A DNA stretch of 64,000 nucleotides, from the IMG/VR virus record IMGVR_UViG_3300047476_002078, positions 1 to 64,000 of that record; one strand, written 5' to 3'. Below, one piece after another: positions 10,820 through 61,100 of the stretch. The position numbers and the translations under genes were made by a program. Each line of letters begins with the position of its first letter. The first letter of the stretch is position 1. Under the pieces are notes generated by a model that had not been told where the DNA came from, ran no database searches, and saw nothing but the letters and a program-made list of their open reading frames with translations.

Positions 10820-11746
10820 ATGAATTTAAGAAAAATAGCAGGAAGAGTAGCTTTAAAATATGCGGCATCTGGACCATCCTTTGATTACAAATTTAATGAA
10901 GAGGATTCAGAAAAATTAGTGAGAAATCCTAACCCTCACGGTGTTAAGAAAATGGTGACACAGGAATACGCTGATAGATTTTTGGGGAAACAGCCAAAAA
11001 AATCTCCTGTTGAAAATAAACCTGCTCCTTCAACAATTTCTAAAGCTAAAGAAAATAAGGAAAGAGTAGAAAATCAGAAAAAAACTAATCAAAAGCACTC
11101 GAATGGGATGAATAAACCTGAATACAATAAAAAGGGTGCTGAAGTAACAAAAGATGAATGTGTTTCTTTTATTAAAGAGTTTCACCCTGCTTTTGAAGAA
11201 GCCGCTTCATGGGGAGAAGGGTTTAAAAAATCAGGAGCGATGAGTTTTTCAGGAAGATTAAAAGACGAAAATTCTCTACATGATAAAATGAAAGGAAGAT
11301 TCAAAGAAAGAACTTTGAATTCGGCAGGGGATATTGTAGGAAGTAGAGCTATTTGCAAAAATATGAACGATGTTAAAAAAATCATTTCTCATGTTTATGA
11401 CACTTATGATGTTTTAGAACACGATGATAGTGTAGAAGAAAAAGTAAGACCTGAAGGGTACAGAGCACATCATTTTACAATCAAATCAAGTGATGGTAAA
11501 TTAATTGAACTTCAAGTTAAAACGCAAAATCAACAATTATGGTCAGGGTACACACATGACACAATTTATAAAGCTGAAGACCCTGAAATAATACAAGCCA
11601 AGCCAGATATAGATAAATATACTAAAGCAGTTAGTGACTATATTTATGCTGTGGATACTGGCAAAGACCCCGGTTCTTTTCCAGAAACTCCAGAAATATT
11701 AAAAAAGAAAAATTTAGCTTTCCCTGCTAATGACATAGTGAGATAA
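10820..11746 (+). CDS. Small alarmone synthetase (RelA/SpoT synthetase domain) with N-terminal extension
   Basis: GRLKDENSLHDK, DIVGSR, EHDD, GYRAHH and ELQVKT..QQLW..YTHDTIYK motifs; no hydrolase, TGS or ACT domain. Confidence 0.88.
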   Translation: MNLRKIAGRVALKYAASGPSFDYKFNEEDSEKLVRNPNPHGVKKMVTQEYADRFLGKQPKKSPVENKPAPSTISKAKENKERVENQKKTNQKHSNGMNKPEYNKKGAEVTKDECVSFIKEFHPAFEEAASWGEGFKKSGAMSFSGRLKDENSLHDKMKGRFKERTLNSAGDIVGSRAICKNMNDVKKIISHVYDTYDVLEHDDSVEEKVRPEGYRAHHFTIKSSDGKLIELQVKTQNQQLWSGYTHDTIYKAEDPEIIQAKPDIDKYTKAVSDYIYAVDTGKDPGSFPETPEILKKKNLAFPANDIVR

Positions 11747-11750
11747 GAAA

Positions 11751-11963
11751 ATGAAATACTATCTAGTTATAAGAGATAAAAAAAATAAAAACTTAGACGT
11801 AAAAGAATATCCTACCATGAAAAAAGCTTCCGCAGTAAAAGAAGCTATGCTTAAAAGCGGTCATGAAGGGCAATTAGTAATAGGTTACGGAAGCTCAATG
11901 AATGATTTTTTAACATCATTTACAGAGTATCGACCAAAAAATTGGAAAGATTTAATTAAGTAA
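11751..11963 (+). CDS. Hypothetical protein, 4 bp downstream of the synthetase
   Basis: 70-aa ORF, tight operon spacing. Confidence 0.6.
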   Translation: MKYYLVIRDKKNKNLDVKEYPTMKKASAVKEAMLKSGHEGQLVIGYGSSMNDFLTSFTEYRPKNWKDLIK

Positions 11964-12573
11964 TTTTTTTGGCAGGTATTCCAACATAAATACCACTTTC
12001 TGTTAAATTTTTGACAACTGCGGATTGAGCACCAGTAATTACATTTTCTGATATACAAATTTTTTCTCGAACCGCTGTTCCTGTTCCCAAAGAGGAATAT
12101 TTTCCGATAACTGTGTTACCTGAAATGTGACAGCCCGGATTTGCTGTTACATAATCATCAATTACTGCGTCGTGCCCAACAGTACAGTTAAGATTCAAAA
12201 CAACGTAATCCCCGATTTTAACATTAGTAGTGATTATACACCCTGCGGTTATAATCCCTCCTACACCTATATCAGCATCTTGAACTAAAGCTTTTGGGTG
12301 AACAAATGTTTTCATTGGCTTTAATCCGCTTTTCAATGCTTTTTCTACCATTATTTTTTTAACTTCGGGATTACCTACACCGATTATAAATTCAGCATTT
12401 TGAAATGAATCAAAGTTCCAATTTTTAACAACCTTGTAACTTTTATTTTTTATAATTATTTCTTCAATATTTGTGAAATCATCCACAAAAATAAAATCAG
12501 CATTAAAAGAATCTAAGTGAAAAAAGACTTCCCTTGCAAATCCCCCTGCTCCAAGAATAACTATGTTTTTCAT
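11956..12573 (-). CDS. NeuD/PglD-family sugar acetyltransferase
   Basis: ILGAGGFAREV N-terminus, hexapeptide repeats, VGHD, C-terminal GIPAK. Confidence 0.9.
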   Translation of the reverse strand: MKNIVILGAGGFAREVFFHLDSFNADFIFVDDFTNIEEIIIKNKSYKVVKNWNFDSFQNAEFIIGVGNPEVKKIMVEKALKSGLKPMKTFVHPKALVQDADIGVGGIITAGCIITTNVKIGDYVVLNLNCTVGHDAVIDDYVTANPGCHISGNTVIGKYSSLGTGTAVREKICISENVITGAQSAVVKNLTESGIYVGIPAKKIT

Positions 12574-14654
12574 GAAAGAGCCTCAATAATTCCATTGAAA
12601 ACTTCATCCATTTCTTCATTTGTAATAGTTTCGTAAAACGGTATGCACAATATTCTGTCTGACATGTTTTCAGTTTTTGACAAGTCGTTAAATGCCAAAT
12701 TATCTTTGAAAAAAGGCTGTGCGTGAATAGGTATGTAGTATATTCTGGTGTTAATACCTTTTTTGTTCAAAGATTCAATAACTAAATTTCTTTCTTCTTT
12801 ATTTGATAAAATAATAGGGTAAACCTGATAACCTGAATTAATATTTTTAATTGTTTTTATTGAACTTGTAGAAAATTTTTGTTGATAGTAATCGTGTTTT
12901 TGCTTTTTAATATTTATTTTATTTTCAATAGTATCCATAACAGATAGACCTATAGCAGCATGAAATTCAGAGCATTTTGCATTTGTACCCGATAAGGTTG
13001 AAACATTATTGGTAAAACCAAAATTTATAATTTTTCTGCATTTCTCAATAAAATTTGAATTTTTACTGGTCACTAAGCACCCTTCACCAATACCAAAAGT
13101 TTTGGTTATATGCAGACTGAAAATTTCGCAATCTCCTGCCGACCCTAATTTTGTTTCGTCACTGTACGATGCTCCAAGTGCAGCCGCCGAATCAAAAATT
13201 AAAATTAATCCATGTTTATTAGCAAAGTCTTCGTACTTTTTATAATCACATGTGTAGCCGAGAGCCTGAACGACAATCATGGCTTTTGTATTGGCAGTTA
13301 ATTTTTTTTCTGCGTTTTTAATACATAAATGAATACCTTCTTCTTCAATATCAACTAAGACAGGATTACATTCAGCGTTTAATACAGAATGTGCTGTAGC
13401 AGAAAACGTAAAAGATGGAATTAAAATATCACAGTTCTTTAAATCATGTGCTTTTATAGCAACAGTTAATCCTATTGTTGCGTTATTCATTAAAACTGGG
13501 ACATTATCAAGATTGAGATAGGACTTGAACCTTTCCTCTAACATTTTTACACAGGGTCCGTTGTTAGAGAATGTATTTGATTCATAGGAATCTACTAAAT
13601 ATTTAGCCCAATCTTTGATTTGTGGTGGGTTAGGTTTTAAAACAGGTATCTTTAAAAAAAGATCAGAGTCATCAAAAAATTTACTGGCGTAATTTGGCAA
13701 ATTTTTAATGTCGAATCTTTCGTATCTTTCAGAGATTTCTAAATTCACTTTAGAATTTATCTGAATTTCACTTAAAGCAGAGCTAGATATTATTGAATTT
13801 GGGACATTTACTGTAAAATGGTCTTGTTCTATTTTGTAAACATTCAAACTTAACCCATTAACTGAAATAGAATCTTCTATCTTTAAATCAGCTAGTATCT
13901 CTGGGCAAGAAATTATAAATTCTTTTGATTCCTCTAAGTTGTTAATTGAAGATACAGTCCCTATATTTTTGATTTGACCAGCAAACATATTTCCCTTCCT
14001 ATTTTGTATATCAACCCCAAATATAGGGTATTTATCTAAATCTTTGAAATGCCATCCGATTATTTCACCATTAGATAAAGAATTTGATCTTAAATTATCT
14101 ACGTTATTGACCGTAAAATGAAAAAGAGGGTCAAAATTCTTTTTTAGACACATTAAATTTTTACTATCTTGAATATTATTTTGAATTTTCAAATTTAAAA
14201 AATATCTAAAATTTTGGAGCTTGAAAACAATAGGCTCCTGATTATCTGTAAATAAAGCATGAGCTTCTCTTGTCCAACTCATTAATGTTTGATTATTAAA
14301 AACGATATTATCTTCGGAGAGTATGACAATATCTTCCGGTTGTGCAGAAGATAGAGCTTCTGACAGTTTTGAATAGTGGTGCGTTAAATTTTCAACAAGT
14401 GAATTTTCTGAAGGTAAGTCTATGACGCTGTACAAAATTTTATCTTTATACTTATCAAAAATGTCTTTATTTTCTTCAAACAGTAGAGCTTTCGGCTTTC
14501 CGTTATAATCTTGGTTACATTCTACGAAAACAAAATAATCAACGATGGAAAGTTCATAAACTAATGTTTCTAAAACTGTTAGGGTATGTTTACCGTAATT
14601 TACAATAGGTACACATAAAAAAACTTTTTTTCCAAATTTATTGCTTAATTCCAT
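12570..14654 (-). CDS. Fusion: GT17-like domain + riboflavin-synthase-alpha-like barrel + DegT/DnrJ sugar aminotransferase
   Basis: N: DYFVFVECN..NGKPK, GWHF; aa 223-306: MFAGQIKNIGTV..DSISVNG..VNLE; C: PSFTFSATA, FDSAAALG, SLHITKTFGIGEGC. Confidence 0.85.
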   Translation of the reverse strand: MELSNKFGKKVFLCVPIVNYGKHTLTVLETLVYELSIVDYFVFVECNQDYNGKPKALLFEENKDIFDKYKDKILYSVIDLPSENSLVENLTHHYSKLSEALSSAQPEDIVILSEDNIVFNNQTLMSWTREAHALFTDNQEPIVFKLQNFRYFLNLKIQNNIQDSKNLMCLKKNFDPLFHFTVNNVDNLRSNSLSNGEIIGWHFKDLDKYPIFGVDIQNRKGNMFAGQIKNIGTVSSINNLEESKEFIISCPEILADLKIEDSISVNGLSLNVYKIEQDHFTVNVPNSIISSSALSEIQINSKVNLEISERYERFDIKNLPNYASKFFDDSDLFLKIPVLKPNPPQIKDWAKYLVDSYESNTFSNNGPCVKMLEERFKSYLNLDNVPVLMNNATIGLTVAIKAHDLKNCDILIPSFTFSATAHSVLNAECNPVLVDIEEEGIHLCIKNAEKKLTANTKAMIVVQALGYTCDYKKYEDFANKHGLILIFDSAAALGASYSDETKLGSAGDCEIFSLHITKTFGIGEGCLVTSKNSNFIEKCRKIINFGFTNNVSTLSGTNAKCSEFHAAIGLSVMDTIENKINIKKQKHDYYQQKFSTSSIKTIKNINSGYQVYPIILSNKEERNLVIESLNKKGINTRIYYIPIHAQPFFKDNLAFNDLSKTENMSDRILCIPFYETITNEEMDEVFNGIIEALS

Positions 14655-14742
14655 TAATTTACCTCTAACATATTTATAGCTAAAAAATTATAAAAATTTT
14701 ATGGCTTTATCCATATATATTTATTAGGATATTTTTACGGAG

Positions 14743-15084
14743 GTGTCTATGAGTTTTATGAACAGGATACGTAAAGAGGCTCTTAGTGATGAGGAGCTTA
14801 TCAAAATTCGAGAAAGCGAGCTTCTTTTTAACGAAAATCGTTACGGTAATAACGTACCAAAAGAAGAAATAGAAGAAGATAATAGATGCCGTGAGGTTCT
14901 ATCTGGTATTAAAGCACAAGCTGAATCTTTGTTGAGTGATACAGATACTTTAGAAATAAACATTAAAAAAATAGAAGATAATCTACAAAATGTTACGGTT
15001 TCAGGAACTTCTAATCAAGATTATGACGAAATTATTCTTTCAGTCGATGAAGGTAAAGTTATTTTTAAAATAACACCAAATTAA
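14743..15084 (+). CDS. Hypothetical acidic protein with RIRKEA leader
   Basis: RBS GGAGGT; start is probably the ATG at 14749. Confidence 0.6.
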   Translation: MSMSFMNRIRKEALSDEELIKIRESELLFNENRYGNNVPKEEIEEDNRCREVLSGIKAQAESLLSDTDTLEINIKKIEDNLQNVTVSGTSNQDYDEIILSVDEGKVIFKITPN

Positions 15085-15413
15085 ATTGAAAAAGATTCAC
15101 CGCAACCACAGGTATTTTTGGCATTATGGTTTTCAAATACAAAACCTTTTCCATTAAGACCGTCTTTAAAGTCAAGTGTGACTCCTTTCAGATAGATAGC
15201 GGATTTAGGGTCTATTAAGATGGAGATGTTATCCAAACTTAATATGTTGTCTTTTTCTTTAAACTGAGAAAATTCTATTTTATAAGATAACCCAGAACAT
15301 CCTCCTCCTGTTACAGAGATGCGTAAACCCTTTTCGTTGTTCGCATTTTCGGTACTCCAGATGTCTTTTATTTGTTGGATTGCCTTTTCGGTTACTTCAA
15401 TTATGTTGTTCAT
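15081..15413 (-). CDS. iscA: A-type Fe-S carrier protein (IscA/HesB)
   Basis: GGGCSGLSY and TCGCGESF motifs. Confidence 0.93.
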   Translation of the reverse strand: MNNIIEVTEKAIQQIKDIWSTENANNEKGLRISVTGGGCSGLSYKIEFSQFKEKDNILSLDNISILIDPKSAIYLKGVTLDFKDGLNGKGFVFENHNAKNTCGCGESFSI

Positions 15414-16096
15414 AAAACCTCTTTATCAATTATCGCCGTAATTTGCTCTTTTGATAGAGTTCCATCTATTTCAAAAACTTTAGGAAAATTTGTAGATAAT
15501 TCAATTTCTCCTAAAAAGGGACAGTTTAATTTATTTATAGCAAATTTTTGTCCGTTTATGCTATTCAAAGAGTTTAAATCCTTAGAAATTCTTAAAAAAT
15601 TTTCTCTTACTTTTTCCGTAAAACTGTCACCTTTAGATTCTTCTCTCGTGGAAGAAGTATCACCTCTTTCAAACCTTCGTTTTGTAGCTTCTTCGATAGG
15701 TATATCTAAGAAAAAAATATGAGAGGGGAAAACCTGAATAGCAAATTTTAACAGGTTCCAAATGTCTTGAACTTTGTTTCCACAAGCTACACCATAAGCT
15801 AAACCGCTCATAAATGATCTGTCTGAAACAACAAAATAACCGTCTTCTAAAAGCTGTTTTACCTTGGCGGTATGTTCGGCTCGATCAGCTTGCATTAGCA
15901 GTTCCAATGATGCTGGAGATATTTTTTCATGGCTTAAAACAAAATCTCGAACTTTTAAATTTATCAAAGGGCTTCCGGGTTCTCTAGTCCAAATTGCTTT
16001 GTGCCCTGAATTGATTAATCTTTTTACTAAATTTTCACTGTGACTTGATTTACCACACCCGTCGATTCCTTCAAACACGATATATTTGTTTTCCAT
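15410..16096 (-). CDS. tmk: Thymidylate kinase
   Basis: FEGIDGCGKS, TREPG, QADRAEH and SDRSFMS..AY motifs. Confidence 0.93.
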   Translation of the reverse strand: MENKYIVFEGIDGCGKSSHSENLVKRLINSGHKAIWTREPGSPLINLKVRDFVLSHEKISPASLELLMQADRAEHTAKVKQLLEDGYFVVSDRSFMSGLAYGVACGNKVQDIWNLLKFAIQVFPSHIFFLDIPIEEATKRRFERGDTSSTREESKGDSFTEKVRENFLRISKDLNSLNSINGQKFAINKLNCPFLGEIELSTNFPKVFEIDGTLSKEQITAIIDKEVL

Positions 16097-16167
16097 AAAT
16101 CCCCTTTTACGGAAAAAGTTTAAAATAATGTGTTGGAATTTTCAAACGAATAGTATAATTTGATTTT

Positions 16168-16809
16168 ATGATTAGTATTATTACAAGCGTAAATGACCAA
16201 GAGCAATATGAACAATTTATGATGCCTAGTATGAACAGGCTTCAGAAATTTCTTATGGATTCTAATCTTCCTACTCTGGATATAGTAAAAGTTTCTGGTT
16301 CAGAGTCTATCGGCAAGAATTACAATGAAGGCATAAGAAAAGCCATCTACAAGGTAAAAGTTTTTATTCACCAAGATGTAGATATGCTAGAAATAGATTG
16401 GGCTTTTAAACTTCTAAAAATTTTTGCTGATTACCCAGATGTGGGATTAGTAGGATTGGTAGGAACCGTAAATTTTCCGAATAGAGGGTTTTGGTGGACT
16501 TCTGGAAGAGAATTTATTCGTGGAGAGCTTTGGTCAGGAAAAGAAAAAGCTGATTGGACTTTTTTGCCTGTGATTGCCCCGACAACAGTAGAATGTATTG
16601 ATGGCTTTTTCATGGCAACAAATAGAGACATTCTATGGGATGAGGACATTAAAGGTTTTCATTGTTATGATATGGACTACTCTCGTACAATTACTAAAAA
16701 CGGTTTAAAAATAATGGTCATGCCTCATAAATCTTGGCATATTGGAGAAATTCGAGAGGCAAAACACGAGCATTTATTTGAAACTTACTATAAAAAATGG
16801 AATTTATGA
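16168..16809 (+). CDS. GT-A glycosyltransferase-like protein
   Basis: YNEGI..A, FIHQD, IDGFFMA and FHCYDMD motifs. Confidence 0.8.
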   Translation: MISIITSVNDQEQYEQFMMPSMNRLQKFLMDSNLPTLDIVKVSGSESIGKNYNEGIRKAIYKVKVFIHQDVDMLEIDWAFKLLKIFADYPDVGLVGLVGTVNFPNRGFWWTSGREFIRGELWSGKEKADWTFLPVIAPTTVECIDGFFMATNRDILWDEDIKGFHCYDMDYSRTITKNGLKIMVMPHKSWHIGEIREAKHEHLFETYYKKWNL

Positions 16810-17717
16810 AAATAGCAGTTTTTTGGGGTGGAAGACATACTTTGCCCGGTGCTTGCGATGAAAATACTTGGTACAGTTTTTACAATTCTGGTTGGAAGTA
16901 CGGATTTGAAAGTTTAGGGCACTCTGTACATTATTTTTCATGGGATGACCATGAAGATAGATCAGGATATGATCTTTACATTTACGCTCCGGGGTTTTTA
17001 ACAAATTTAACTTATCATCCAAAAATTTATCATCCGAACGTATTTTTTACTGAAGAGGCTAGTTGTGCAGTTTCTTGGGCGGCTTCTCACAGTTACTACT
17101 ACGATGCGGTCACATTTCTTGATTACATAAATTGGAAAGCTGTAAAACATATAGGCGTTAATAACGCATATTGGGTGCCCGGTGCAGTTGACCCGACAGT
17201 GTTTAAAAATTTGAATCAGGAAAGAATATATAATACAGCGTTTTTAGGTTCTTATGATGATAATGTTAAAATCATTAATGGTAAGACACGATTAGATTTT
17301 ATACGAGCTATTGACGCTCATAATAAACCTTCAATGGTAGCCAGAGGTTATTACGCATTTGAAGCTAATAAGATTTGGAATGTTACTAAAATAGGTGTCG
17401 ATGTACCGATAGTTGAGTTCTGTTCTTTTAGACTTTTTCAAATAATTGCGTCAGGGGCTTTCTGTATTACTCGAAAAACTAGATTGGATAGTGGAATATC
17501 ACAACTTCTTGAACCTGATATGTATGACACTTATAACGACATAGATGATCTTGTTTTTAATGTAGCTCCGTATTGGATAGTTAAAGACCAAAAACGGGAG
17601 AAACTATGTAAGACTGCTCAAGAGTTTGTTCTCCAAAATCATACTTTTAAAAATCGTGCAGAGCAAATATTAAAAATAGCTGGTCTTATGGAAGGAAAAA
17701 TTCCGTATCAAGGATAA
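16806..17717 (+). CDS. GT-B glycosyltransferase (CgeB-like C-terminal domain)
   Basis: AVDPTVF, AFLGS, RLFQIIASGAF and HTFKNRAEQIL motifs; ATGA overlap gives a start at 16806. Confidence 0.78.
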   Translation: MKIAVFWGGRHTLPGACDENTWYSFYNSGWKYGFESLGHSVHYFSWDDHEDRSGYDLYIYAPGFLTNLTYHPKIYHPNVFFTEEASCAVSWAASHSYYYDAVTFLDYINWKAVKHIGVNNAYWVPGAVDPTVFKNLNQERIYNTAFLGSYDDNVKIINGKTRLDFIRAIDAHNKPSMVARGYYAFEANKIWNVTKIGVDVPIVEFCSFRLFQIIASGAFCITRKTRLDSGISQLLEPDMYDTYNDIDDLVFNVAPYWIVKDQKREKLCKTAQEFVLQNHTFKNRAEQILKIAGLMEGKIPYQG

Positions 17718-21279: not shown

Positions 21280-21384
21280 TACTCTAATAAATACATATTA
21301 GTGATCGGTCCATGGGAAGCAAGGAAGCTATTATTTGTATATGAACATATTTGAATTCACCCTTTAACTCTTAGGAGAATTCGT

Positions 21385-21642
21385 ATGGAAGTCATCTTAG
21401 TCGCAATTAAACCTTTAATTGAAACATTTGCAGGGAATAACGGTGTTGTTCTTCAGGTAGTATCAATCATCGGAGCTTTAAGAATTTTATTAAAGCCTGC
21501 CATGACTCTTGCTCAAGCTGTAGTTGATGTTACTCCGTCTCAAACGGATAACGAAAAACTAAACAAGTTTTTAGAAAGCAAGACTTATGCAACAATCGTT
21601 TATGTTTTAGATTGGTTCGGTTCAATTAAATTACGTAAGTAA
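21385..21642 (+). CDS. Small membrane protein (holin-like)
   Basis: 85 aa with hydrophobic segments and a basic C-terminus; RBS AGGAG. Confidence 0.45.
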   Translation: MEVILVAIKPLIETFAGNNGVVLQVVSIIGALRILLKPAMTLAQAVVDVTPSQTDNEKLNKFLESKTYATIVYVLDWFGSIKLRK

Positions 21643-21663
21643 TTGTAAATTCAAAAGGATTTG

Positions 21664-21696
21664 AAAAAGGGGAGTATTTTTTACTCCCCTTTTTTT
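21664..21696 (+). terminator. Rho-independent terminator
   Basis: aaaaaggggagta / tactccccttttt stem followed by a T-run. Confidence 0.85.
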
Positions 21697-21752
21697 ATAC
21701 ATAATCCCTTAATTTTCTACAATATAGGTAAGTTCAATTAAGGAGATTTGAG

Positions 21753-27378: not shown

Positions 27379-27615
27379 TTATTTATTTTCAAATTCATCC
27401 CATAAAGATTGGCAAAAAGCCCAAGTTGCGTCTTCACTTGGAAAATATTTTCTAACCTTCTTATGACATTTAGTTCTCTTGTGCTCTACGTCTCCGACTA
27501 AAGTATCCCAAAATTGTTTTCTACTCCCTTCAGTCCAGCCTTTAGGCATATTTTTCCATTCTGTAGAAATTTTGTTTTCTAATTCTGAAATTTTTTCCAT
27601 TAAACTTTTTTTCAT
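27379..27615 (-). CDS. Small protein with EKISELENKIS leader (head-internal candidate)
   Basis: 78 aa; GWT..SRKQFW..H..TKC..AFC. Confidence 0.6.
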   Translation of the reverse strand: MKKSLMEKISELENKISTEWKNMPKGWTEGSRKQFWDTLVGDVEHKRTKCHKKVRKYFPSEDATWAFCQSLWDEFENK

Positions 27616-38021: not shown

Positions 38022-39196
38022 TATTTACTGATTATATGAAAAAAACAAACATTTTGTTAAGTTATCTAGTTACGGGTCTTCCAGATGAAGGGAAAACATC
38101 TTTTTCCATAGCTTTAGCCAAAATTTCGGGTGATTACTTTGTTAGTGGGTGTCAGCCTATTTTTAACCCTAAAAGCATAGTAATAATGTTGGATAGATCA
38201 TTTTACTTATTTATAGGAGAAAACCCAGCAACTACAAAATATTCAATAACTACAGCTATTCACAAAGATGCCAAGCTGGACAAAGACGAGTTTCTAAAAG
38301 TAGTAATTAAAGAAATTGATGAAATGTTAGAATACAACCCGAATCAGATCATAATAGAAGGCTACGTTTTAAATTTTATTAAAGAAGAAGTAGAAAATTA
38401 TTTAAAAGATAAAACATTATCTGCTCACATTAGAATGAGAAATTATGTAATACATTATTTGGATGAGGTTTATTCAACTAAGAGGTGCGAAAGTCCGAAT
38501 AGTTATACAGATGAAATAGTTGTAGCTTATAGAGATGCTATTCAATTGTTAAAACAAAAATTAGTTGAAGTTCACGGCAAAAACATTTTATCTCAAGTAA
38601 ATTATCAAGCTTTTCCTGACTTAGGAATAAATGTTAAAAATTCAGACAGCATTAAAAAATTTAAGAGCTTAAATCTAAAAAATTTACAAGACAAAAAAGT
38701 TTTGGACGTTGGGTGTAACCATGGGAGATTTTGCATTGAATCAATTAGGCTAGGTGCTTCCGTAGTTCATGGCATAGATAGTAACAAAAATTTTCTACAT
38801 ACTGCTTCAGCTTTAAATAATATTTTTTATCGCTATAACATTTCTTTTTTTGAATGTGATTTTTTAAATTTTAATCAGTCTAATTATGACATTATTATTG
38901 CTTGTTCCGTGTTTCATTATTTTAAAGAAAATCAACCTGAATTTTTTAAGAAAGCTTATGATTTGTTGGTTAAAGATGGTGTCTTAATTCTTGAAGCAGG
39001 AATATCTGATTTGCATCCAGATAAAGAATTTATTGAAAAGTATCAAAGAGGTGTGGACCCTACACCTTGTCACTTTCCAAATCATTTAGCTTTACTTGCC
39101 ATGGCTCAAGGCTTTAAGTGTGAATATCTAGGTAGTTCCGTTAATCAGCATGGGGATAGAATAAACAGGAAAGTTTATCATTTAAGGAAATTATAA
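38003..39196 (+). CDS. Class I SAM methyltransferase with N-terminal P-loop-like domain
   Basis: VTGLPDEGKTS; KVLDVGCNHG..GID and SVFHY motifs; start may be the ATG at 38036. Confidence 0.78.
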   Translation: MYGNPLIFTDYMKKTNILLSYLVTGLPDEGKTSFSIALAKISGDYFVSGCQPIFNPKSIVIMLDRSFYLFIGENPATTKYSITTAIHKDAKLDKDEFLKVVIKEIDEMLEYNPNQIIIEGYVLNFIKEEVENYLKDKTLSAHIRMRNYVIHYLDEVYSTKRCESPNSYTDEIVVAYRDAIQLLKQKLVEVHGKNILSQVNYQAFPDLGINVKNSDSIKKFKSLNLKNLQDKKVLDVGCNHGRFCIESIRLGASVVHGIDSNKNFLHTASALNNIFYRYNISFFECDFLNFNQSNYDIIIACSVFHYFKENQPEFFKKAYDLLVKDGVLILEAGISDLHPDKEFIEKYQRGVDPTPCHFPNHLALLAMAQGFKCEYLGSSVNQHGDRINRKVYHLRKL

Positions 39197-41187
39197 TGTC
39201 TATTAAAATAGCAAAAATTTTAGCAAAAATAGCTTTAACTTATGAAGAGTATAAAAATCTTCATCCTAAAACTAAAAAAACTCCAGATGATCCACTGTTT
39301 TCAAAAGAAAAAGAAAAAAAGAAAATAAAAAAAGATGTTCCTAATAATACAAAAAATAAAAAGGAAGAATCTAAACAAATTAAAAAGACTACCAAAGAAA
39401 TGTCTGACGACGAAATCGTAGAAAAATATAAGCCTACTTTTTCTGGGGGCGAGTTTCAGAGAAAAATGAATTTTGATGAACTTGGAAAGTATGCGGAAAA
39501 AATGTCTTCAGATGATTTAGCTTACCATCTTGTAAATAGCCCGATACCAGAGGATGAAGGGCATCCGTTTTTTCAATCGGCTAATTATAAGATTGGGAGA
39601 TTTAACGGATTTATGTTACAGCTTTTCAATCCCAACGTGAGCAAAGATGAAAGAACTTCGCTCGCCAGTTACATATTAGATAAAGCTGGAGTTTCTTTTG
39701 TTGGGGGAAGAACTTTAAATCAATTTATAACAGCCTTAGCGAAAAAAGGGTTAATTGATAAAAGTCTTTCTGAAGAATCAGAGTATGATAAATTAAGAAC
39801 TGATCTTTATTATGGAAATATATCTGACTCAGAAGAAATAAGAAAATACGCTAAAGAAAGAGATGGGAAAAGTATGAAGTGGGCGTATCAATTAAAAACT
39901 AATCCGTTCACTCCTTCGGATGTTCTAGTCAAAATTTATCAAGAACATGGTTCAGACTCTTCCTATAAAGAAGTTTTAAGACATAAAAATTTTCCAATAG
40001 AAACACTATTAAAAATAAGACCCCCTACATCTTCTGATAATTATTCTTTTTATTTAGATAGAGAAGATGTACCAAGTCAAATTCAACAACAAATAATTGA
40101 AACTTACATCATGAAGGGTAATGGTTTTTCAATACCTAAAAACTTTAATTTTTCAGAAAAACAACTTTCTGAATTATGGAGAAAAAACCTAGCTTCTCAC
40201 AAAAAATCAAACAAAGAAAAAGCTCAAAAAAGCCAAGACGGATTTATTTACCCTACTGATACAGAGTACGGTCTTTCAAAATGGGCAGAGCATCCAAACT
40301 GTCCCAAAGAGATACTTACAGAAATATTAAATTGGGAAAATAAGCAAGATAGAGAAGGTGGAGTACATTTCTCAATATCAAAAGCAAAAGTTTCTGCTTA
40401 TCAAAACTTAGTTAAAAGAAATATTTTAAAAAAAGAAGATATTGTTAATAAAGTAAAAGAGACTTTAAATTTACACGGTGATGAAGAAATTCTTCAAAAA
40501 TTTGGAGAAAGAGCTTACTGTTCTGAAAATCAAAAAAATGTTGTAAAAAGAACTATTACTAAAGTTTCTCCTGAAGAAAAATTAAAAATACAAGAAGAGA
40601 TGAATAAGACCGCAGTTCACGACGATTTTGATTATGATGTTTTAGAAGTATATGAGATAGATAAAGAGCCTCACAAAGACTTTGAAAATACCGAAAAAAG
40701 AATCAATAATGTTTTTAAAAATGTGTATCATGGTACATCATTTTCAAATGCAGGAGGTATTTTGGCTGACGGTATCAATACTGATTCAAAAGCTAGAACA
40801 GGTCAAATGTTTGGGCAGGGTTTTTATTTAGCTTCAGCCTCTTCAAAAGCAGTTCAATATGCGTCTGATAACTTCTCCAAGAATGAAGGGGAGGGCGTAG
40901 TTTTTCTTTTGGACGCAAGTATGGGAAAAACGACTGAGATGAAATACGGAAGACCTGCTAACGATGATATATCTCGTGTTGAATGGAAAGATGAAATCAA
41001 AAAAAAGAAAGAAGAGTACGAGAAAAATACAGGCAAGACCACTAACACTTATTGGCATTTAGAGCACGATTCAGTTATAGCTAAAGCAGGCATGTCTTTA
41101 GATCACGATGAATATGTGGTTAAGGATTCTTCTCAACTGAGAATAAAAAGAATAGTTCACGTTAAAAAGAAACCAAAAGCAGGCTAA
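39196..41187 (+). CDS. PARP-family (ARTD, H-Y-E) ADP-ribosyltransferase with long N-terminal region
   Basis: VYHGT..NAGGILADG..TGQMFGQGFYLA..SKAVQYA..VFLLDA.MG..HDEYVV; helical NP.TP..L repeats upstream. Confidence 0.9.
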   Translation: MSIKIAKILAKIALTYEEYKNLHPKTKKTPDDPLFSKEKEKKKIKKDVPNNTKNKKEESKQIKKTTKEMSDDEIVEKYKPTFSGGEFQRKMNFDELGKYAEKMSSDDLAYHLVNSPIPEDEGHPFFQSANYKIGRFNGFMLQLFNPNVSKDERTSLASYILDKAGVSFVGGRTLNQFITALAKKGLIDKSLSEESEYDKLRTDLYYGNISDSEEIRKYAKERDGKSMKWAYQLKTNPFTPSDVLVKIYQEHGSDSSYKEVLRHKNFPIETLLKIRPPTSSDNYSFYLDREDVPSQIQQQIIETYIMKGNGFSIPKNFNFSEKQLSELWRKNLASHKKSNKEKAQKSQDGFIYPTDTEYGLSKWAEHPNCPKEILTEILNWENKQDREGGVHFSISKAKVSAYQNLVKRNILKKEDIVNKVKETLNLHGDEEILQKFGERAYCSENQKNVVKRTITKVSPEEKLKIQEEMNKTAVHDDFDYDVLEVYEIDKEPHKDFENTEKRINNVFKNVYHGTSFSNAGGILADGINTDSKARTGQMFGQGFYLASASSKAVQYASDNFSKNEGEGVVFLLDASMGKTTEMKYGRPANDDISRVEWKDEIKKKKEEYEKNTGKTTNTYWHLEHDSVIAKAGMSLDHDEYVVKDSSQLRIKRIVHVKKKPKAG

Positions 41188-44098: not shown

Positions 44099-44099
44099 T

Positions 44100-53357: not shown

Positions 53358-53603
53358 CTATTGTTCCATGTTGAAAATTTTGCATAATAACGCAAGGTGA
53401 ACAATAACTAAAAGCCTGTTTCCTCTTCGCTCTTTTACTCTTAAAGAACCTAGTTCAGGGTAAGTTGCGTAGTCACTACCAGAACTATAATTCGCAGGAG
53501 GTGGGAGAAGTATAGAAACGATCTCATCTTCATCCCAGTGATCTTTGTTACCGTAAAATACGACGTTATCTTTTATATGTGATTTTAACTCTTCAATAGT
53601 CAT
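53358..53603 (-). CDS. Hypothetical protein
   Basis: 81 aa, coupled to the NADAR gene. Confidence 0.55.
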   Translation of the reverse strand: MTIEELKSHIKDNVVFYGNKDHWDEDEIVSILLPPPANYSSGSDYATYPELGSLRVKERRGNRLLVIVHLALLCKIFNMEQ

Positions 53604-54159
53604 TTTGTTCGCACTTTTTTAACTCTTCTCTGATCTCCATTAAAGCTTCACCTAAAAGATTTTGACCGAAACCAACATTACCTAATTTTCCTGTTCCCCA
53701 CACTAGATCATACGGGTTATCAGAATAAATTAAGCGATCTTTTGTAGAAAGAAGGAGATTTTTCATTTCTTCTTCTCTGAATTTTACTCTTAGTGCTTTT
53801 AACATGATACTATATTTTATACTGTCCCAATCTTCTCTAATGTTTATTTTTGAAGCCATCTTTTTTGCATCTTTTGGATTTGGTGCAAATCGGATGGTTT
53901 CTTGTTCAAAAAAATTTTCTGATTTCATTGCTTGAAAATAATGCTCAACTGTTTGCCAATCCCTTCCATCTATTTCTAATGGAGTTAAAGCGTAGTTAGA
54001 CAACATTGAATATTTTTGATTACTAAAAAAGAAAATAGGAATCGTTGGATTATCTGCACTAATATCGTTATCAAAAATTATGTTAGATTTAGCTTCTTTT
54101 AAGTTCCAGTTTGTTATATGGAGGTTACGGTTAGGATTTAATCTAAAAAGTCCACTCAT
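53593..54159 (-). CDS. NADAR/YbiA-family hydrolase
   Basis: LSNY, TVEHYFQAMK, WD..K..IM..AL..KF, D..WG.G and G.NLLG..LM.IR motifs. Confidence 0.9.
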   Translation of the reverse strand: MSGLFRLNPNRNLHITNWNLKEAKSNIIFDNDISADNPTIPIFFFSNQKYSMLSNYALTPLEIDGRDWQTVEHYFQAMKSENFFEQETIRFAPNPKDAKKMASKINIREDWDSIKYSIMLKALRVKFREEEMKNLLLSTKDRLIYSDNPYDLVWGTGKLGNVGFGQNLLGEALMEIREELKKCEQNDY

Positions 54160-55046: not shown

Positions 55047-55496
55047 TCAGTTCCATTTGTCTCTTCTGTAGTTGCCTCTATCTCCTCGATCACGTCTGTT
55101 ACCTCTGTTTTCGATGTCATATTTCGTGAATCCTGCATCATTTGTGAAAGGGCGTTCCTCACGATTAAAAGACCTTTCTTCACGATTAAAAGACTTTTCT
55201 CTAGGGGCATACGAGGTTCTTTCAGTACGAGGTCTATCCCCTCTAGGTGCTTGAGGTTGAGCTTCTTTTACAACTAGGGTTCTTCCGCTTAGTTCTCCAC
55301 CATTTAATTCCTGAATAGCTTTCTTACCGTCTTCTTCATTTTCCATCTCTACAAAAGCAAAACCTTTAGATTTTCCTGTTTCTCTATCGGTAATCACTCT
55401 TGCATCAACAACTTTTCCAATCTCAGAAAAAGTCATTTTAAGATCATTTGAGGTTACAGTGTAGGGTAGATTAGCTACGTAAATTTTCTTAGACAT
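55047..55496 (-). CDS. Single-RRM RNA-binding protein with Arg/Gly-rich tail
   Basis: RNP2 IYVANL; RNP1 KGFAFVEM; DRETGKS; tandem SFNREER x2. Confidence 0.93.
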   Translation of the reverse strand: MSKKIYVANLPYTVTSNDLKMTFSEIGKVVDARVITDRETGKSKGFAFVEMENEEDGKKAIQELNGGELSGRTLVVKEAQPQAPRGDRPRTERTSYAPREKSFNREERSFNREERPFTNDAGFTKYDIENRGNRRDRGDRGNYRRDKWN

Positions 55497-56521: not shown

Positions 56522-56597
56522 TGGAGCGGGCGAAGGGGTTTGAACCCTCGACATCCAGATTGGAAATCTGGCACTCTACCAACTGAGCTACGCCCGC
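56522..56597 (-). tRNA. trnG: tRNA-Gly(TCC)
   Basis: 76-nt cloverleaf GCGGGCG..., anticodon arm CCAGA-TTTCCAA-TCTGG, T-loop TTCAAAC, encoded CCA. Confidence 0.96.
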
Positions 56598-58855: not shown

Positions 58856-58857
58856 AT

Positions 58858-59667
58858 TTAATCTGCTTTTTTATAGGTAAGAATAGGTTTTCCGCCTTTA
58901 ACAATTGTGAATCCGCCTTCATCATCAAATTTAATTTCACTTGCTTTTGGAAATTCTAACCAAGAGTCGCCATTAGGAGTTTTGAAAGCAACTGCCTTGG
59001 ACTGAATTTTTGAAACTTCTCTTAATCCTAAATCTTTGTTCAATATGTGGTTAAAACAATTCCACTTAGAACCTATAGTTAAAGATTTCTTGAGGTCTGA
59101 TAGACTTGATTTTTTCTTCCACCCTCCACCAAGCTCTTTATAAGTTTTTGAAGCCCATCCATTTCCGTAGGCACTTGGAAAAATTTCAAAACCTTTACCA
59201 TCGTTAGGTCCATTAATTTCTTTTCCGTTATGTTTAATAGATTTAACTTCGCCTTTAGTAAGTTTCTGTACCTTTTCCCACAATGAAGGGTTTGTAGGCT
59301 CATTGTCTCCTGCAAATTTCTCATTAGACTTTTTGCTTAAAACATCTGATACACTGAAACCTTTTTCCCACATCTTGCACGACCAATACTTAGCTTTCCA
59401 TTTTGGTCCGGGGTCAACATCGCATTGATGTCTTGATCTAAAGTTTTTTCTAGCATCGTCGTTATCACGACGGATTTCCATATTAGGGTCGCCAAAATTT
59501 ACTTTAACTACATTACCTTTATCGTTTTTAACATAAACACTAAATTTTTTAGGACCATCTGGAGTTCGGAAAGGCTTATTTAAAGTTACTTTTTTACCTT
59601 GATATTCAGATTCACCTGCTATCTTCATTTCCATTTCAAAAATTTCAAACTCTATATCTTTTTTCAT
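58858..59667 (-). CDS. Modular basic protein (three small domains joined by K-x-A/S linkers)
   Basis: KVTLNKPFR..VKVNFGD..NFRSRHQC..YWSC; PSAYGNGWASKTYKELGG.W; third domain after KKKS. Confidence 0.7.
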   Translation of the reverse strand: MKKDIEFEIFEMEMKIAGESEYQGKKVTLNKPFRTPDGPKKFSVYVKNDKGNVVKVNFGDPNMEIRRDNDDARKNFRSRHQCDVDPGPKWKAKYWSCKMWEKGFSVSDVLSKKSNEKFAGDNEPTNPSLWEKVQKLTKGEVKSIKHNGKEINGPNDGKGFEIFPSAYGNGWASKTYKELGGGWKKKSSLSDLKKSLTIGSKWNCFNHILNKDLGLREVSKIQSKAVAFKTPNGDSWLEFPKASEIKFDDEGGFTIVKGGKPILTYKKAD

Positions 59668-59675
59668 TTTATCTC

Positions 59676-61100
59676 CTAACGGGAATTACCCCAACGTAAA
59701 ACTTTGGCAGCACTAATGAAATCTTGTAATGATGATTTGATTAAATTAGTGTCGTATTTTTTCCCTTTAGGGAACTTTATGTGAAATCTAAAACTTACTG
59801 CCCATGCTTTTGGAATATCATGGTGACTATCAGAAGACATTGTAACAATGTTGTCTTTTACTATAACTCTTGGAGTTCGATAAGTATCGGTTCCATCGTA
59901 ATAGTCTTCTTCTTGGTAGGTTAAGCTACCTGTAACAAATCCACCTGCGTTTTTAATTCCCTTAACAGCACTATCTATTCGAGATTTGAGTGAGCTTTCC
60001 TCAGATTTAGAAAAATAAAGTTTTGTTTTCCAAGAATCATCAATTTCTTCATATCCCTCGACAGTAATCAAATTTTCATTTTCTGATTCTTTTACTTTAA
60101 TATGTTTTCCATCTTCCATTTTACGAAATTCATGCTGATTTTCTTCAGTTTTATTTTTCAGTTTCTTATATCCACCATCAACTAACATTCTTTGTAATTT
60201 TTCTACTTGAAACAAATTGTCTGTTTTTGATTGAAGTGTACTCTTATCTTCAAAAAATAATTCTTTTACATTGTCATGATTGCCTTCTCCTAAGCTGAAT
60301 TGATAGTAAGGAAGACCTTCTGTAAAAGTCATAACAATAGATGCAAAAAGAGGTTTTTGTCCTTTAATGTTAATTACTGCCCCTGATTTAACATCAATGC
60401 TGTAGTTCATTGGATTTTGTCTTGCATAGTTTCTGTACTTAACATCAAAATCTAACCCTGAACCTCTTGTTATGTTTTCTTTTACTAATGATTGAAATTT
60501 TTTTACTAAATCAGATAAATCTTTAGGGGGTGTTTTTGATGAATTAAATTTGTCTTTTTGACTTTCAATATCTTTTTCAGCTTTTGTCTTATATTTTTCA
60601 GCTTCAGATTTTAATTTTGCTAGATCAGAATTATTTTCTTTCCCTTGGTTGAAAGCTCTAATTACATTCTGAATTATAAAAACGGCTTGTCGAAGTTTTA
60701 CTAACTTTTGAGATAAATCTTCGGCTCCTGCTTTTTTTGATGCTCTTATTGAAGATGAATACTCAATTGTAGCCACAAGATCATAAACATCATTTTCCTG
60801 TGGTTTTGAGGGACCAAAAGAAGCGTTAATGTAAAGTAAGAATCCTCCCTTATCTCCATGTGGAATTTCTACGTACCATTTTTTTCCATCTGGCATAGGT
60901 GAATGTTCACTATTAGGTATGTGGTAATAATCAGTTTTTTGTATGTTATAGTCTATTCCATTATCAGAAAGGTCTTTTAAAATACTTTGAACAGGCTTCC
61001 ACGTATCATCTCTAAAAAATCCCTTAGTCTTGGGATATATTATAGACTGTAAGTAAGACTTCGCTTTATGCTTTGATAACTCGTTAAACATGACGTTCAC
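59676..61100 (-). CDS. Modular hypothetical protein with K-x-A motifs
   Basis: 474 aa from the GTG; the ATG at 61091 fits the GAGG spacing; SKHKA and SKKAG motifs. Confidence 0.6.
   Translation of the reverse strand: MNVMFNELSKHKAKSYLQSIIYPKTKGFFRDDTWKPVQSILKDLSDNGIDYNIQKTDYYHIPNSEHSPMPDGKKWYVEIPHGDKGGFLLYINASFGPSKPQENDVYDLVATIEYSSSIRASKKAGAEDLSQKLVKLRQAVFIIQNVIRAFNQGKENNSDLAKLKSEAEKYKTKAEKDIESQKDKFNSSKTPPKDLSDLVKKFQSLVKENITRGSGLDFDVKYRNYARQNPMNYSIDVKSGAVINIKGQKPLFASIVMTFTEGLPYYQFSLGEGNHDNVKELFFEDKSTLQSKTDNLFQVEKLQRMLVDGGYKKLKNKTEENQHEFRKMEDGKHIKVKESENENLITVEGYEEIDDSWKTKLYFSKSEESSLKSRIDSAVKGIKNAGGFVTGSLTYQEEDYYDGTDTYRTPRVIVKDNIVTMSSDSHHDIPKAWAVSFRFHIKFPKGKKYDTNLIKSSLQDFISAAKVLRWGNSR

What the first reader, a model, noticed from the sequence alone, without database searches (positions are those of the whole stretch)
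10820..61100. Shared basic N-terminal leader ending in K-x-A/S on about seven scattered proteins: candidate protease-matured, virion-delivered effector system
Seen: MNLRKIAGRVALKYA|A (10820, alarmone synthetase), MSIKIAKILAKIA|L (39196, PARP), MSFMNRIRKEA|L (14749), MDYKFVKVEIDKMYKQLHKYA|S (21753), MKKSLMEKISELENKIS|T (27379), MKKDIEFEIFEMEMKIA|G (58858), MFNELSKHKA|K (61091). The same motif recurs internally at apparent domain boundaries (DKEA|A, NEKFA|G, SKKA|G). An I-x-E-L-E-x-K pattern is shared by 27379, 58388 and 58858. Known: T4 gp21 and phiKZ gp175 prohead proteases remove leaders from head-internal proteins at Glu-based sites, and T4 Alt is a packaged, injected ADP-ribosyltransferase. 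Inference: this is a different (K-x-A) packaging/cleavage code that loads a PARP and a (p)ppGpp-type synthetase for injection at the start of infection.
Basis: partly seen in the sequence, partly recalled or inferred. Interest (0 to 1): 0.88.

Follow-up and report, generated by a model that had tools for sequence, protein, structure and literature searches.

The report
Shared N-terminal tag on huge-phage enzymes
The proposed K-x-A cleavage code is no commoner than chance, but two or three of the seven listed proteins carry a real, undescribed 40-residue N-terminal tag that this 356-kb phage and its relatives put on many unrelated enzymes, probably to send them to one shared destination.

Summary
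All seven N-termini are in the sequence as quoted. K-x-[A/S] is not enriched: 24 of 95 proteins have it in the first 25 residues, against 22.9±3.5 for internal windows.

Four listed proteins (14749, 21753, 58858, 61091) show no shared leader. 58388 carries the pattern only at its C-terminus.

The PARP-like protein (39196) does start with a real module: a two-heptad helix that tends to end K-Φ-A, then a near-invariant motif, Y-x-x-Y-K-K-x-H-P-x-T-x-K-x-x-x-D-P-[M/L]-F, then a disordered linker. A profile of it finds 79 protein clusters among 1.84 billion (E down to 1e-19), about nine in ten with it at the N-terminus. The cargoes are PARP, LPD1, topoisomerase IB, RelA/SpoT, a DUF3293/SAM-lyase-like domain and many unknowns.

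A strict DNA pattern gave 9 true hits in 2.9 million viral contigs. Six lie in this one genome. No true hit was found in 185,579 cellular genomes, in cultured phages, Pfam, PDB or the literature.

The RelA/SpoT protein (10820) has a conserved, diverged version. The 78-aa protein (27379) probably has the helix alone.

Function is inferred: a shared addressing or docking tag, most plausibly for virion loading. Cleavage is untested.

The parts
39196..39306 (+). N-terminal module of the PARP-like protein (residues 1-37): a helix ending K-I-A, then the Y-E-E-Y-K-N-L-H-P-K-T-K-K-T-P-D-D-P-L-F motif
   Evidence: Family HMM E=4.8e-18. Profile search E=6.4e-18 in 1.84e9 proteins. Conserved in five homologues. 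AF2 model has helices 3-12 and 16-22.
39307..39399 (+). Lys-rich disordered linker between the module and the cargo (residues 38-68)
   Evidence: pLDDT below 50 for residues 38-65. Length and sequence vary among homologues. The same low-complexity linker follows the module in other cargo types.
39196..41187 (+). PARP-like ADP-ribosyltransferase gene (663 aa). The catalytic domain covers residues 464-657, nt 40585-41166.
   Evidence: Pfam PF00644, 84.8 bits against a cut-off of 26.7. H512, Y544 and E639 are invariant in the family alignment.
10820..10987 (+). Conserved N-terminal leader of the RelA/SpoT protein (residues 1-56): helix 3-16 ending K-Y-A, then a diverged proline-rich motif (N-P-N-P-x-G ... 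E-Y-A-D-x-F)
   Evidence: Conserved in 16 homologues, with M1 and A7 invariant. Linked to the module through an orthologous RelA/SpoT subgroup: hhalign P=1.1e-5 (module vs subgroup) and P=5.5e-4 (subgroup vs this type); family HMM hits the subgroup at E=7.6e-6 and 9e-5. Not detected directly by the module HMM. In the AF2 model the helix is detached and of low confidence.
10820..11746 (+). RelA/SpoT-type nucleotide pyrophosphokinase gene (308 aa). The synthetase domain covers residues 145-253, nt 11252-11578.
   Evidence: Pfam PF04607, 57.5 bits against a cut-off of 27. Synthetase motifs are invariant. The model resembles CapRel, RelP and RelQ (Foldseek E 8e-10 to 1e-8).
27379..27615 (-). 78-aa protein that probably carries the helix only (residues 1-17, nt 27565-27615), without the H-P-x-T ... 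D-P-M-F motif
   Evidence: Second-best hit of the family HMM in the window, E=0.081, helix columns only. Helix PSSM score 9.6. Its orthologue in L210/L207 keeps the helix and scores E=0.024. This evidence is weak.

Best explanation
The window is the first 64 kb of a circularly assembling 356-kb uncultivated phage genome.

Shown. The phage and its relatives own a portable N-terminal module of about 40 residues. It has three parts:
- an amphipathic, leucine-zipper-like helix of two heptads that usually ends K-Φ-A;
- a near-invariant linear motif, [Y/F]-x-x-Y-K-K-x-H-P-x-T-x-K-x-x-x-D-P-[M/L]-F;
- a disordered low-complexity linker.

The module is fused in front of unrelated cargo domains: two PARP-like ADP-ribosyltransferases, a DUF3293/SAM-lyase-like protein and three small proteins in this genome; LPD1, topoisomerase IB and RelA/SpoT in relatives. 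The window's RelA/SpoT enzyme carries a diverged version.

Inferred. The module is an addressing or docking tag that binds one conserved partner, so a set of host-manipulating enzymes goes to one destination. The most likely destination is the assembling virion, for delivery with the DNA at the next infection. On that reading the system is a disaggregated version of the packaged polyvalent and MuF-fused effectors, working like the T4 capsid targeting sequence.

Whether the tag is cut off, and where, is unknown. The K-x-A end of the helix is a helix feature, not a demonstrated cleavage site.

Confidence. That the module is real and modular: about 0.95. That it is a partner-binding tag: about 0.8. 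That the destination is the virion: about 0.4. The figure given is for the whole statement.
For: Reality and modularity:
- The profile of the N-terminal 48-50 aa finds 79 clusters (E≤1e-3; 7 at ≤1e-10) in 1.84e9 proteins. They are 48-706 aa long, and about nine in ten have the match within the first 30 residues.
- Cargoes are PARP, LPD1, Topoisom_I, DUF3293, RelA_SpoT, DnaJ and many with no Pfam hit.
- Pairwise similarity between proteins with different cargoes is confined to the first ~45 residues.
- A strict DNA pattern gives 9 true hits in 2.9 M IMG/VR contigs, 6 of them in this genome.
- A relative has three tagged genes within 8 kb, and metagenome contigs hold tandem triplets.
- No true hit came from 185,579 species genomes: the family HMM rejected all 31 pattern matches there, though that strict pattern is not a full survey.

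Shape of a tag:
- Both AF2 models show a short, detached, low-confidence N-terminal helix followed by disorder.
- The helix PSSM is enriched at N-termini of this genome's ORFs: 10/149 N-terminal regions against 3/860 internal ones, P=7e-7.

Virion destination:
- PARP-like ART, RelA/SpoT and LPD1 are the repertoire of phage polyvalent and MuF-fused proteins predicted to be packaged and injected (PMC5512222; PMC9503650).
- The LPD1 cargo region matches giant phage protein families at E~1e-30 and 'minor head protein and DNA pilot' weakly.
- The tagged 128-aa gene and a helix-only 197-aa gene end a same-strand baseplate cluster (phrog_6, E=8.6e-21).
- The RelA/SpoT gene borders the tail, fibre and CHAP-lysin region once the contig ends are joined.
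- T4 provides the precedent of an N-terminal targeting peptide shared by diverse internal proteins and by Alt (PMC9026906).
Against: - There is no direct evidence of packaging, injection or cleavage. No cultured phage carries the module, so no virion proteome exists.
- PARP#1 lies among methyltransferase and glycosyltransferase genes. PARP#2, p209 and p273 lie among small unknown genes, not structural ones.
- A 20-residue near-invariant motif is unlike the short, loosely defined T4 targeting sequence and looks more like a docking motif for a hub protein.
- In a few proteins the module is internal or duplicated (P0052 at 407-446 of 512; P0061 and P0026 with two copies). That fits a docking motif better than a propeptide.
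- Topoisomerase IB and DnaJ cargoes could equally act inside the infected cell.
- Only about 40% of the genome could be read. The capsid, scaffold, portal and protease genes were not seen.
Confidence: 0.42

Rival explanations
1. The module is a docking motif for a hub inside the infected cell, for example a phage or host sliding clamp, RNA polymerase, the nucleoid, a chaperone or a phage-built compartment. It recruits DNA- and NAD-acting enzymes to that site after synthesis and has nothing to do with the virion.
For: - The linear motif is extremely conserved, as short docking motifs are.
- It is occasionally internal, C-terminal to another domain, or duplicated.
- Cargoes include topoisomerase IB and DnaJ.
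- Most tagged genes are not in structural clusters.
Against: - About nine in ten copies sit at the extreme N-terminus.
- The cargo set overlaps packaged-effector repertoires.
- One tagged gene ends a baseplate cluster.
- No candidate hub has been identified.
Confidence: 0.3
2. One reading: about seven window proteins share a basic leader that a prohead protease removes after K-x-A/S, a new cleavage code that also marks internal domain boundaries.
For: - The family helix does tend to end K-x-A: 32 of 66 members have K-x-[A/S] at that position.
- The RelA/SpoT and 27379 orthologues keep K/R-x-A/S there.
Against: - The motif is not enriched.
- Four of the seven listed proteins show no relation to the module. 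58388, cited only for the pattern, carries it at its C-terminus.
- The leader of 58858 is not conserved among the distinct homologue N-termini read (35, from the 80 loci kept of at least 596 hits).
- 61091 does not fit the motif.
- Conservation is strongest just after the proposed cut, so the cut would leave the functional core on the mature protein.
- No protease has been identified.
Confidence: 0.05
3. The module is a regulatory element of the proteins themselves: an autoinhibitory segment, a degradation tag that limits effector lifetime, or an anchor for a cognate inhibitor.
For: - Several cargoes (RelA/SpoT of CapRel-like fold, PARP-like ART) are potentially toxic enzymes that need control.
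- Small ORFs follow many of these genes.
Against: - In the models the helix does not pack on the catalytic core.
- The small downstream ORFs are not the same family across cargo types.
- The same tag sits on tiny proteins with no enzyme domain.
Confidence: 0.1
4. The whole observation is compositional chance: Lys-rich N-termini in an AT-rich genome.
For: This is true for K-x-[A/S] as a descriptor and for recurring gapped patterns in general.
Against: It cannot explain E-values of 1e-17 to 1e-19 against 1.84e9 proteins, six copies in one genome out of nine in all of IMG/VR, or conservation across homologues.
Confidence: 0.02

Closest known systems
T4 capsid targeting sequence (CTS) of the internal proteins IPI-III and the propeptides of Alt
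   Same: An N-terminal peptide shared by otherwise unrelated proteins of one phage. It is portable to foreign cargo. It serves host-takeover proteins, including an ADP-ribosyltransferase whose gene sits next to baseplate genes (PMC9026906; PMC5512222).
   Different: The CTS is about 10 residues, loosely defined, and removed by gp21 at Glu-based sites. Here the module is about 40 residues with a near-invariant 20-residue motif. No sequence relationship was tested or claimed, and packaging and cleavage are unproven.
Propeptides of ejection and inner-body proteins in phiKZ-like and SPN3US-like giant phages
   Same: Giant phages load many paralogous, often tandemly encoded proteins into the head for ejection (PMC5694885 and PMC10052503 abstracts).
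   Different: Those propeptides are defined by protease sites, not by a shared docking motif. The present phage has no nucleotide-level match to any cultured phage for the one stretch tested (window 19036-26572), and its protease was not seen.
Phage polyvalent proteins and MuF-fused effectors (Iyer et al. 2017)
   Same: The effector repertoire is the same: PARP-related ART, RelA/SpoT and LPD1. The LPD1 region of tagged proteins matches giant phage protein families.
   Different: Polyvalent proteins join 2-15 domains in one polypeptide, or to MuF or portal. Here each effector is a separate gene with a common tag, and no MuF or portal fusion was seen.
Encapsulation peptides of bacterial microcompartments and cargo-loading peptides of encapsulins (analogy, from my own knowledge)
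   Same: The architecture is the same: a short amphipathic terminal helix, a flexible linker, and varied enzyme cargo directed into a protein shell.
   Different: They have different sequences and different shells, and are usually helix only. Here a second, far more conserved linear motif follows the helix.
Small alarmone synthetases and toxSAS/CapRel tRNA pyrophosphokinases (cargo at 10820)
   Same: RelA_SpoT synthetase domain with conserved motifs and no hydrolase domain. The closest folds are CapRel, RelP and RelQ.
   Different: It has a ~140-residue N-terminal extension that includes the leader. No conserved neighbouring antitoxin was found. The substrate is unknown.

Membership tests
T4-type capsid targeting sequence / prohead-protease propeptide | Short peptide at the extreme N-terminus, shared by unrelated proteins of one phage | tested here: met
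   Six full copies and one diverged copy in this genome. About nine in ten of 79 clusters have it within the first 30 residues. It is about 40 aa long, not about 10.
T4-type capsid targeting sequence / prohead-protease propeptide | Removed by the prohead protease at a defined site | not testable with these tools
   No virion N-terminomics exists and the protease gene was not within reach. K-x-A is not enriched, and conservation continues past it.
T4-type capsid targeting sequence / prohead-protease propeptide | Cargo is present in the mature head and ejected | not testable with these tools
   No cultured phage carries the module.
Polyvalent proteins (Iyer et al. 2017) | Two to fifteen effector domains in one polypeptide | tested here: not met
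   Each tagged protein has at most one recognised cargo domain.
Polyvalent proteins (Iyer et al. 2017) | Presence of LPD-type domains and effector domains of the polyvalent repertoire | tested here: met
   LPD1 in P0024, P0039 and P0049. PARP/ART, with a weak ART-PolyVal hit in P0038. RelA_SpoT (repertoire from PMC5512222).
Polyvalent proteins (Iyer et al. 2017) | Fusion or adjacency to MuF, portal or other virion genes | tested here: inconclusive
   No MuF or portal fusion was seen. One tagged gene ends a baseplate cluster; the others are in non-structural surroundings.
RelA/SpoT homologue, small alarmone synthetase / toxSAS type | RelA_SpoT synthetase domain above Pfam's threshold, with conserved catalytic motifs | tested here: met
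   57.5 bits against a cut-off of 27. R146, K148, S152, D171, R176, the G-Y-R-A-H-H block and E230-L-Q-V-K-T are invariant. The assignment of these to the synthetase motifs is from my own knowledge.
RelA/SpoT homologue, small alarmone synthetase / toxSAS type | Adjacent cognate antitoxin (required for toxSAS membership) | tested here: not met
   The downstream gene differs between homologues: 70 aa here, 206 and 190 aa in L009 and L010. It does not align.
PARP / ARTD-type ADP-ribosyltransferase | PARP catalytic domain above threshold, with the H-Y-E triad | tested here: met
   84.8 bits against a cut-off of 26.7. H512, Y544 and E639 are invariant. Reading them as the triad is from motif context and my own knowledge. 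The catalytic part of the AF2 model is of low confidence.
Any described protein family (Pfam, PHROGs, PDB) for the module itself | A significant match of the N-terminal 45 residues | tested here: not met
   No Pfam or PHROG hit covers residues 1-45 in any tagged protein. Best PDB E-value is about 1. The motif strings are absent from 8.4 M papers and preprints.

The most novel reading that the evidence does not exclude
Uncultivated huge phages use a sequence-defined, genetically portable cargo-addressing tag (zipper helix plus H-P-x-T-K-K ... D-P-M-F motif). It loads separately encoded effectors into the capsid for co-injection: PARP-like ADP-ribosyltransferases, a RelA/SpoT pyrophosphokinase, topoisomerase IB, LPD1 proteins, a SAM-lyase-like protein and small unknowns. 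This would be a disaggregated polyvalent-protein system, and the tag would list a phage's injected arsenal directly from sequence.
Probability: 0.35. Interest if true: 0.85.

Novelty: new variant of a known kind. Interest (0 to 1): 0.66.

Why it matters
Which proteins a huge phage brings into the cell with its DNA is hard to know without a cultured host and virion proteomics. A tag that can be read from sequence would allow the candidate injected or co-localised set to be listed from metagenomes alone.

It would flag dozens of small proteins of unknown function as probable early host-takeover or counter-defence factors. It would also give a portable peptide for loading foreign cargo.

Even if the destination proves to be an intracellular hub, the finding still stands. 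One conserved 40-residue module unites PARP-like, RelA/SpoT, topoisomerase IB and LPD1 proteins in one phage lineage, and it gives a direct handle (peptide pull-down, complex prediction) on an unknown piece of huge-phage biology.

Tried and rejected
- K-x-[A/S] and K-x-A enrichment in the first 15-30 residues against internal windows: none found.
- I-x-E-L-E-x-K as a shared signature: such recurrences are commonplace, although the pattern does match the family helix consensus.
- HMMs of the PARP-type, RelA/SpoT-subgroup and RelA/SpoT-main leaders against the six-frame window: only the two source genes hit. None of 14749, 21753, 58858, 59676 or 58388 hit.
- 58858: its residues from about 20 to 110 belong to a very widespread phage domain. 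Among the 35 distinct homologue N-termini read, the first 17 residues are not conserved.
- 21753: no relative in IMG/VR other than itself.
- A word-based search with residues 1-42 of the PARP-like protein found only the query, so that search was wasted.
- A conserved partner gene downstream of tagged genes: the 70-73-aa ORF after the PARP orthologues is syntenic only. In the window it is displaced to 42879-43091, and it differs after other cargoes.
- A toxin-antitoxin reading of the RelA/SpoT gene with the 70-aa ORF at 11751: not conserved in homologues.
- tblastn of the module against 50,697 phage records: nothing significant. A weak hit inside a Ralstonia-phage DNA ligase is internal and at chance level.
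- PDB profile search: only chance-level hits.
- Cellular genomes: the family HMM rejected all 31 pattern matches as chance.
- The RelA/SpoT-main-type leader on other cargoes: found only on RelA/SpoT proteins.
- A second shared folded domain after the linker across cargo types: not convincing.

Full report
**Source and setting.** The window is bases 1-64000 of IMGVR_UViG_3300047476_002078, a 355,874-bp contig. GC content is about 32%. One 7.5-kb stretch of it (19036-26572), the only one tested, has no nucleotide-level relative among 50,697 deposited phage records.

The contig's end overlaps its start by 87 nt inside collagen-like G-X-Y repeats, so it assembles as a circle. Recognisable genes include:
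- a CHAP lysin and two SNF2 helicases;
- a DNA ligase, a flap endonuclease and a thioredoxin-like gene;
- many glycosyltransferases and five 2OG-Fe(II) oxygenase paralogues;
- a NADAR protein and an RRM protein.

**Check of the observation.** Every quoted N-terminus is present.
- K-x-[A/S] occurs in the first 25 residues of 24 of 95 crude genes, against 22.9±3.5 for internal windows of the same proteins.
- K-x-A alone occurs in 13, against 9.2±2.5.
- The overall frequency equals the compositional expectation, because Lys makes up 9.8% of residues.
- The 61091 N-terminus reads K-H-K-A and does not fit the motif.
- In 58388 the I-x-E-L-E-x-K pattern lies at residues 143-149 of 155, which is the C-terminus. 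In 58858 it has M in place of L.
- Gapped patterns that recur at least twice are common: 229 in this proteome, 164 after shuffling.

**What homologues show.** The RelA/SpoT protein (Pfam 57.5 bits, domain at residues 145-253) has 16 homologues at 40-78% identity, several of them from contigs of 182-484 kb. All keep an N-terminal helix of the form K/R-I-A-x-x-I-A-L-R-F-A-A, followed by a proline-rich motif.

The PARP-like protein (Pfam 84.8 bits, domain at residues 464-657) has five homologues. In them the first ~37 residues are among the best-conserved parts of the protein, and the conservation runs straight through the proposed K-I-A cut. A sixth hit, P0024, shares only those residues (71% identity over 5% of the query) and otherwise carries an LPD1 domain. 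That was the first sign of a portable module.

**The module.** I took the N-terminal 48-50 residues of five PARP/LPD1-type proteins and two RelA/SpoT-subgroup proteins from fetched loci. A profile of these was run against 1.84 billion representative proteins. It found 79 clusters at E≤1e-3, the best at 1e-19. They are 48-706 aa long, and in about nine in ten the match lies within the first 30 residues.

The consensus is M-K-K-I-L-A-E-I-x-A-L-E-K-K-L-A-I-T-Y-E-E-Y-K-K-x-H-P-K-T-K-K-T-P-S-D-P-M-F. Column frequencies in 66 non-redundant members split it into two parts:
- The helix is moderately conserved: hydrophobic positions at 3-4 residue spacing, K 50% and A 76% at its end.
- The following motif is almost fixed: Y 100%, K 88%, K 76%, H 97%, P 100%, T 94%, K 100%, D 98%, P 86%, M/L 94%, F 97%.

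The helix is the less conserved half of the module.

**Cargo diversity.** Pfam places these domains behind the module:
- PARP (P0018, P0027, P0038);
- LPD1 (P0024, P0039, P0049);
- eukaryotic-type topoisomerase I (P0041, P0058);
- DUF3293 with a weak SAM-lyase match (P0063 and its copy in this genome);
- DnaJ, with the module after it (P0052).

RelA_SpoT, in the subgroup of P0005, P0007, P0008 and P0012, is Pfam-assigned from the homologue table. Many small proteins have no match at all. BLAST between proteins with different cargoes aligns only the first ~45 residues, at 50-70% identity. After the module comes a low-complexity P/K/Q-rich linker, with no convincing second shared domain.

**Copy number and distribution.** A back-translated pattern for H-P-x-T-x-K-x3-D-P-[M/L]-F gave 10 stretches in 2.9 million IMG/VR contigs, 9 of them genuine. 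Six lie in this one genome:
- PARP#1, in the window;
- PARP#2, at about 87 kb;
- a 209-aa protein, at about 89 kb;
- the 273-aa DUF3293-like protein, at about 95 kb;
- a 127-aa protein, at about 168 kb;
- a 128-aa protein, at about 343 kb.

A related phage has three tagged genes within 8 kb (L003). Metagenome contigs L114 and L077 each carry three in tandem. The family HMM rejected all 31 pattern matches in 185,579 species genomes. No cultured phage has the module. No Pfam, PHROG or PDB entry covers it, and the motif strings occur in no paper searched.

**How the seven listed proteins fare.**
- *39196:* a bona fide member (E=4.8e-18).
- *10820:* a conserved but diverged variant. The module HMM does not detect it directly. 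Its orthologues of the P0005/7/8/12 subgroup (49% identical over the full length) carry a recognisable module: family HMM E=7.6e-6 and 9e-5, hhalign P=1.1e-5. The two RelA/SpoT leader types share the helix (P=5.5e-4). In IMG/VR this main leader type occurs only on RelA/SpoT proteins.
- *27379:* probably helix only. It is the second-best hit in the window (E=0.081). Its orthologue keeps the helix, scores E=0.024, and lies next to the RelA/SpoT gene in that phage.
- *14749:* a helix-PSSM hit in a different register, with nothing else to support it.
- *21753 and 61091 (59676-61100):* no evidence.
- *58858:* its first 17 residues are an unconserved extension of a very widespread phage domain (at least 596 IMG/VR hits). 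The 35 distinct homologue N-termini read (of 80 loci kept) lack any K-x-A.

**A wider helix-only class.** A 14-residue PSSM of the helix scores 8 or more in 10 of 149 N-terminal regions of this genome's ORFs, against 3 of 860 internal regions (P=7e-7). Seven of the ten are not full-module proteins, for example L016:873-1292 and L019:658-1251. Part of this sample was chosen because it flanks tagged genes, so the figure describes these neighbourhoods rather than the whole genome.

**Structure.**
- *RelA/SpoT model* (mean pLDDT 84): helix 3-16 has low confidence and is detached, residues 16-30 and 57-68 are disordered, and the core from residue 70 is confident. The core resembles CapRel, RelP and RelQ.
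- *PARP-like model* (mean pLDDT 65, shallow alignment): helices 3-12 and 16-22, disorder at 38-65, then an α-helical region and the catalytic domain.

Both fit a tag on a flexible tether.

**Function (inferred).** A nearly fixed 20-residue motif on unrelated proteins implies one conserved binding partner. Several points favour the virion as the destination:
- The position is N-terminal.
- Each genome holds several copies, often in tandem.
- The cargo set matches that of predicted packaged polyvalent and MuF-fused effectors (PMC5512222; PMC9503650).
- The LPD1 cargo region matches giant phage protein families.
- The 128-aa and 197-aa genes lie at the end of a same-strand baseplate cluster, and the RelA/SpoT gene borders the tail, fibre and lysin region.
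- T4 provides the precedent of a targeting sequence (PMC9026906).

Other points count against it:
- Most tagged genes sit among non-structural genes.
- The motif looks like a docking motif, and some copies are internal.
- There is no data at all on particles, timing or cleavage.

I put the virion reading at about 0.4 and an intracellular hub at about 0.3.

**Verdict.** The underlying intuition is right for two to three of the proteins: scattered enzymes of this phage share an N-terminal leader. That led to a real, apparently undescribed module of huge phages.

Noticed in passing
window 53593-54159 (-): NADAR-domain protein (Pfam E=3.8e-30) in a genome that also encodes two PARP-like ADP-ribosyltransferases. 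This may be an ADP-ribosylation writer/eraser pairing. It has no N-terminal tag.
   Followed up: partly
window 1-464 and L019 5795-14220 (contig 347-356 kb): Collagen-like G-X-Y repeat genes run across the contig junction, and the contig's end and start overlap by 87 nt. The listed ORF 24-464 (+), and the long minus-strand ORFs in L019, are out-of-frame or antisense artefacts of these repeats.
   Followed up: partly
window 34903-37641 and 49061-49717: Five paralogous 2OG-Fe(II) oxygenase genes, four of them adjacent on both strands, share an N-terminal F-F-x-x-G-[F/Y] ... K-[I/L]-D ... A-D-x-L-L region. More 2OG oxygenases lie elsewhere in the genome (L204, L206).
   Followed up: partly
window 12570-14654 (-): A 694-aa fusion of glycosyltransferase family 17, a lumazine-binding domain and a DegT-type aminotransferase. 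It lies in a large sugar-modification island that also holds GT1, GT8 and GT9 genes and an acetyltransferase-like gene, at 11956-17717, 29156-34490 and 41513-42466.
   Followed up: no
window 58858-59667 (-), residues ~20-110: A domain with the motif K-V-T-L-N-K-P-F-R-T-P-x-G-P-K-K-F-S-V-Y-V is extremely widespread in IMG/VR: at least 596 hits, up to 83% identity, on contigs of 4-133 kb. It is often fused after unrelated N-terminal regions. PHROGs gives it as phrog_7595, function unknown.
   Followed up: partly
window 42879-43091 (+); L003 12058-12273; L006 5151-5372; L007 11010-11219: A conserved ~70-aa ORF (I-Q-Y-L-V-N ... E-A-R) follows the PARP-like gene directly in relatives. In the window it is displaced by 1.7 kb, with a GT9 glycosyltransferase and a thioredoxin-like gene inserted between. 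In cluster P0057 it is fused in frame to a tagged protein.
   Followed up: partly
window 11751-11963 (+): A 70-aa ORF starts 4 nt after the RelA/SpoT gene and looks like an antitoxin by position. The downstream gene is different in homologous loci (L009, L010), so a toxin-antitoxin pair is not supported.
   Followed up: yes
P0052 (residues 407-446 of 512), P0061, P0026; L013 33-854 (residues 65-77): The module or its H-P-x-T core is occasionally internal or present twice in one protein. One case lies after a DnaJ domain.
   Followed up: no
window 55047-55496 (-) and 56522-56597 (-): A phage-encoded RRM-type RNA-binding protein (Pfam E=1.2e-25) lies near the single tRNA gene, tRNA-Gly(TCC).
   Followed up: no
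L204 1-2583 (contig ~175.7-178.3 kb): Three consecutive radical-SAM genes lie about 8 kb from the tagged 127-aa gene.
   Followed up: no
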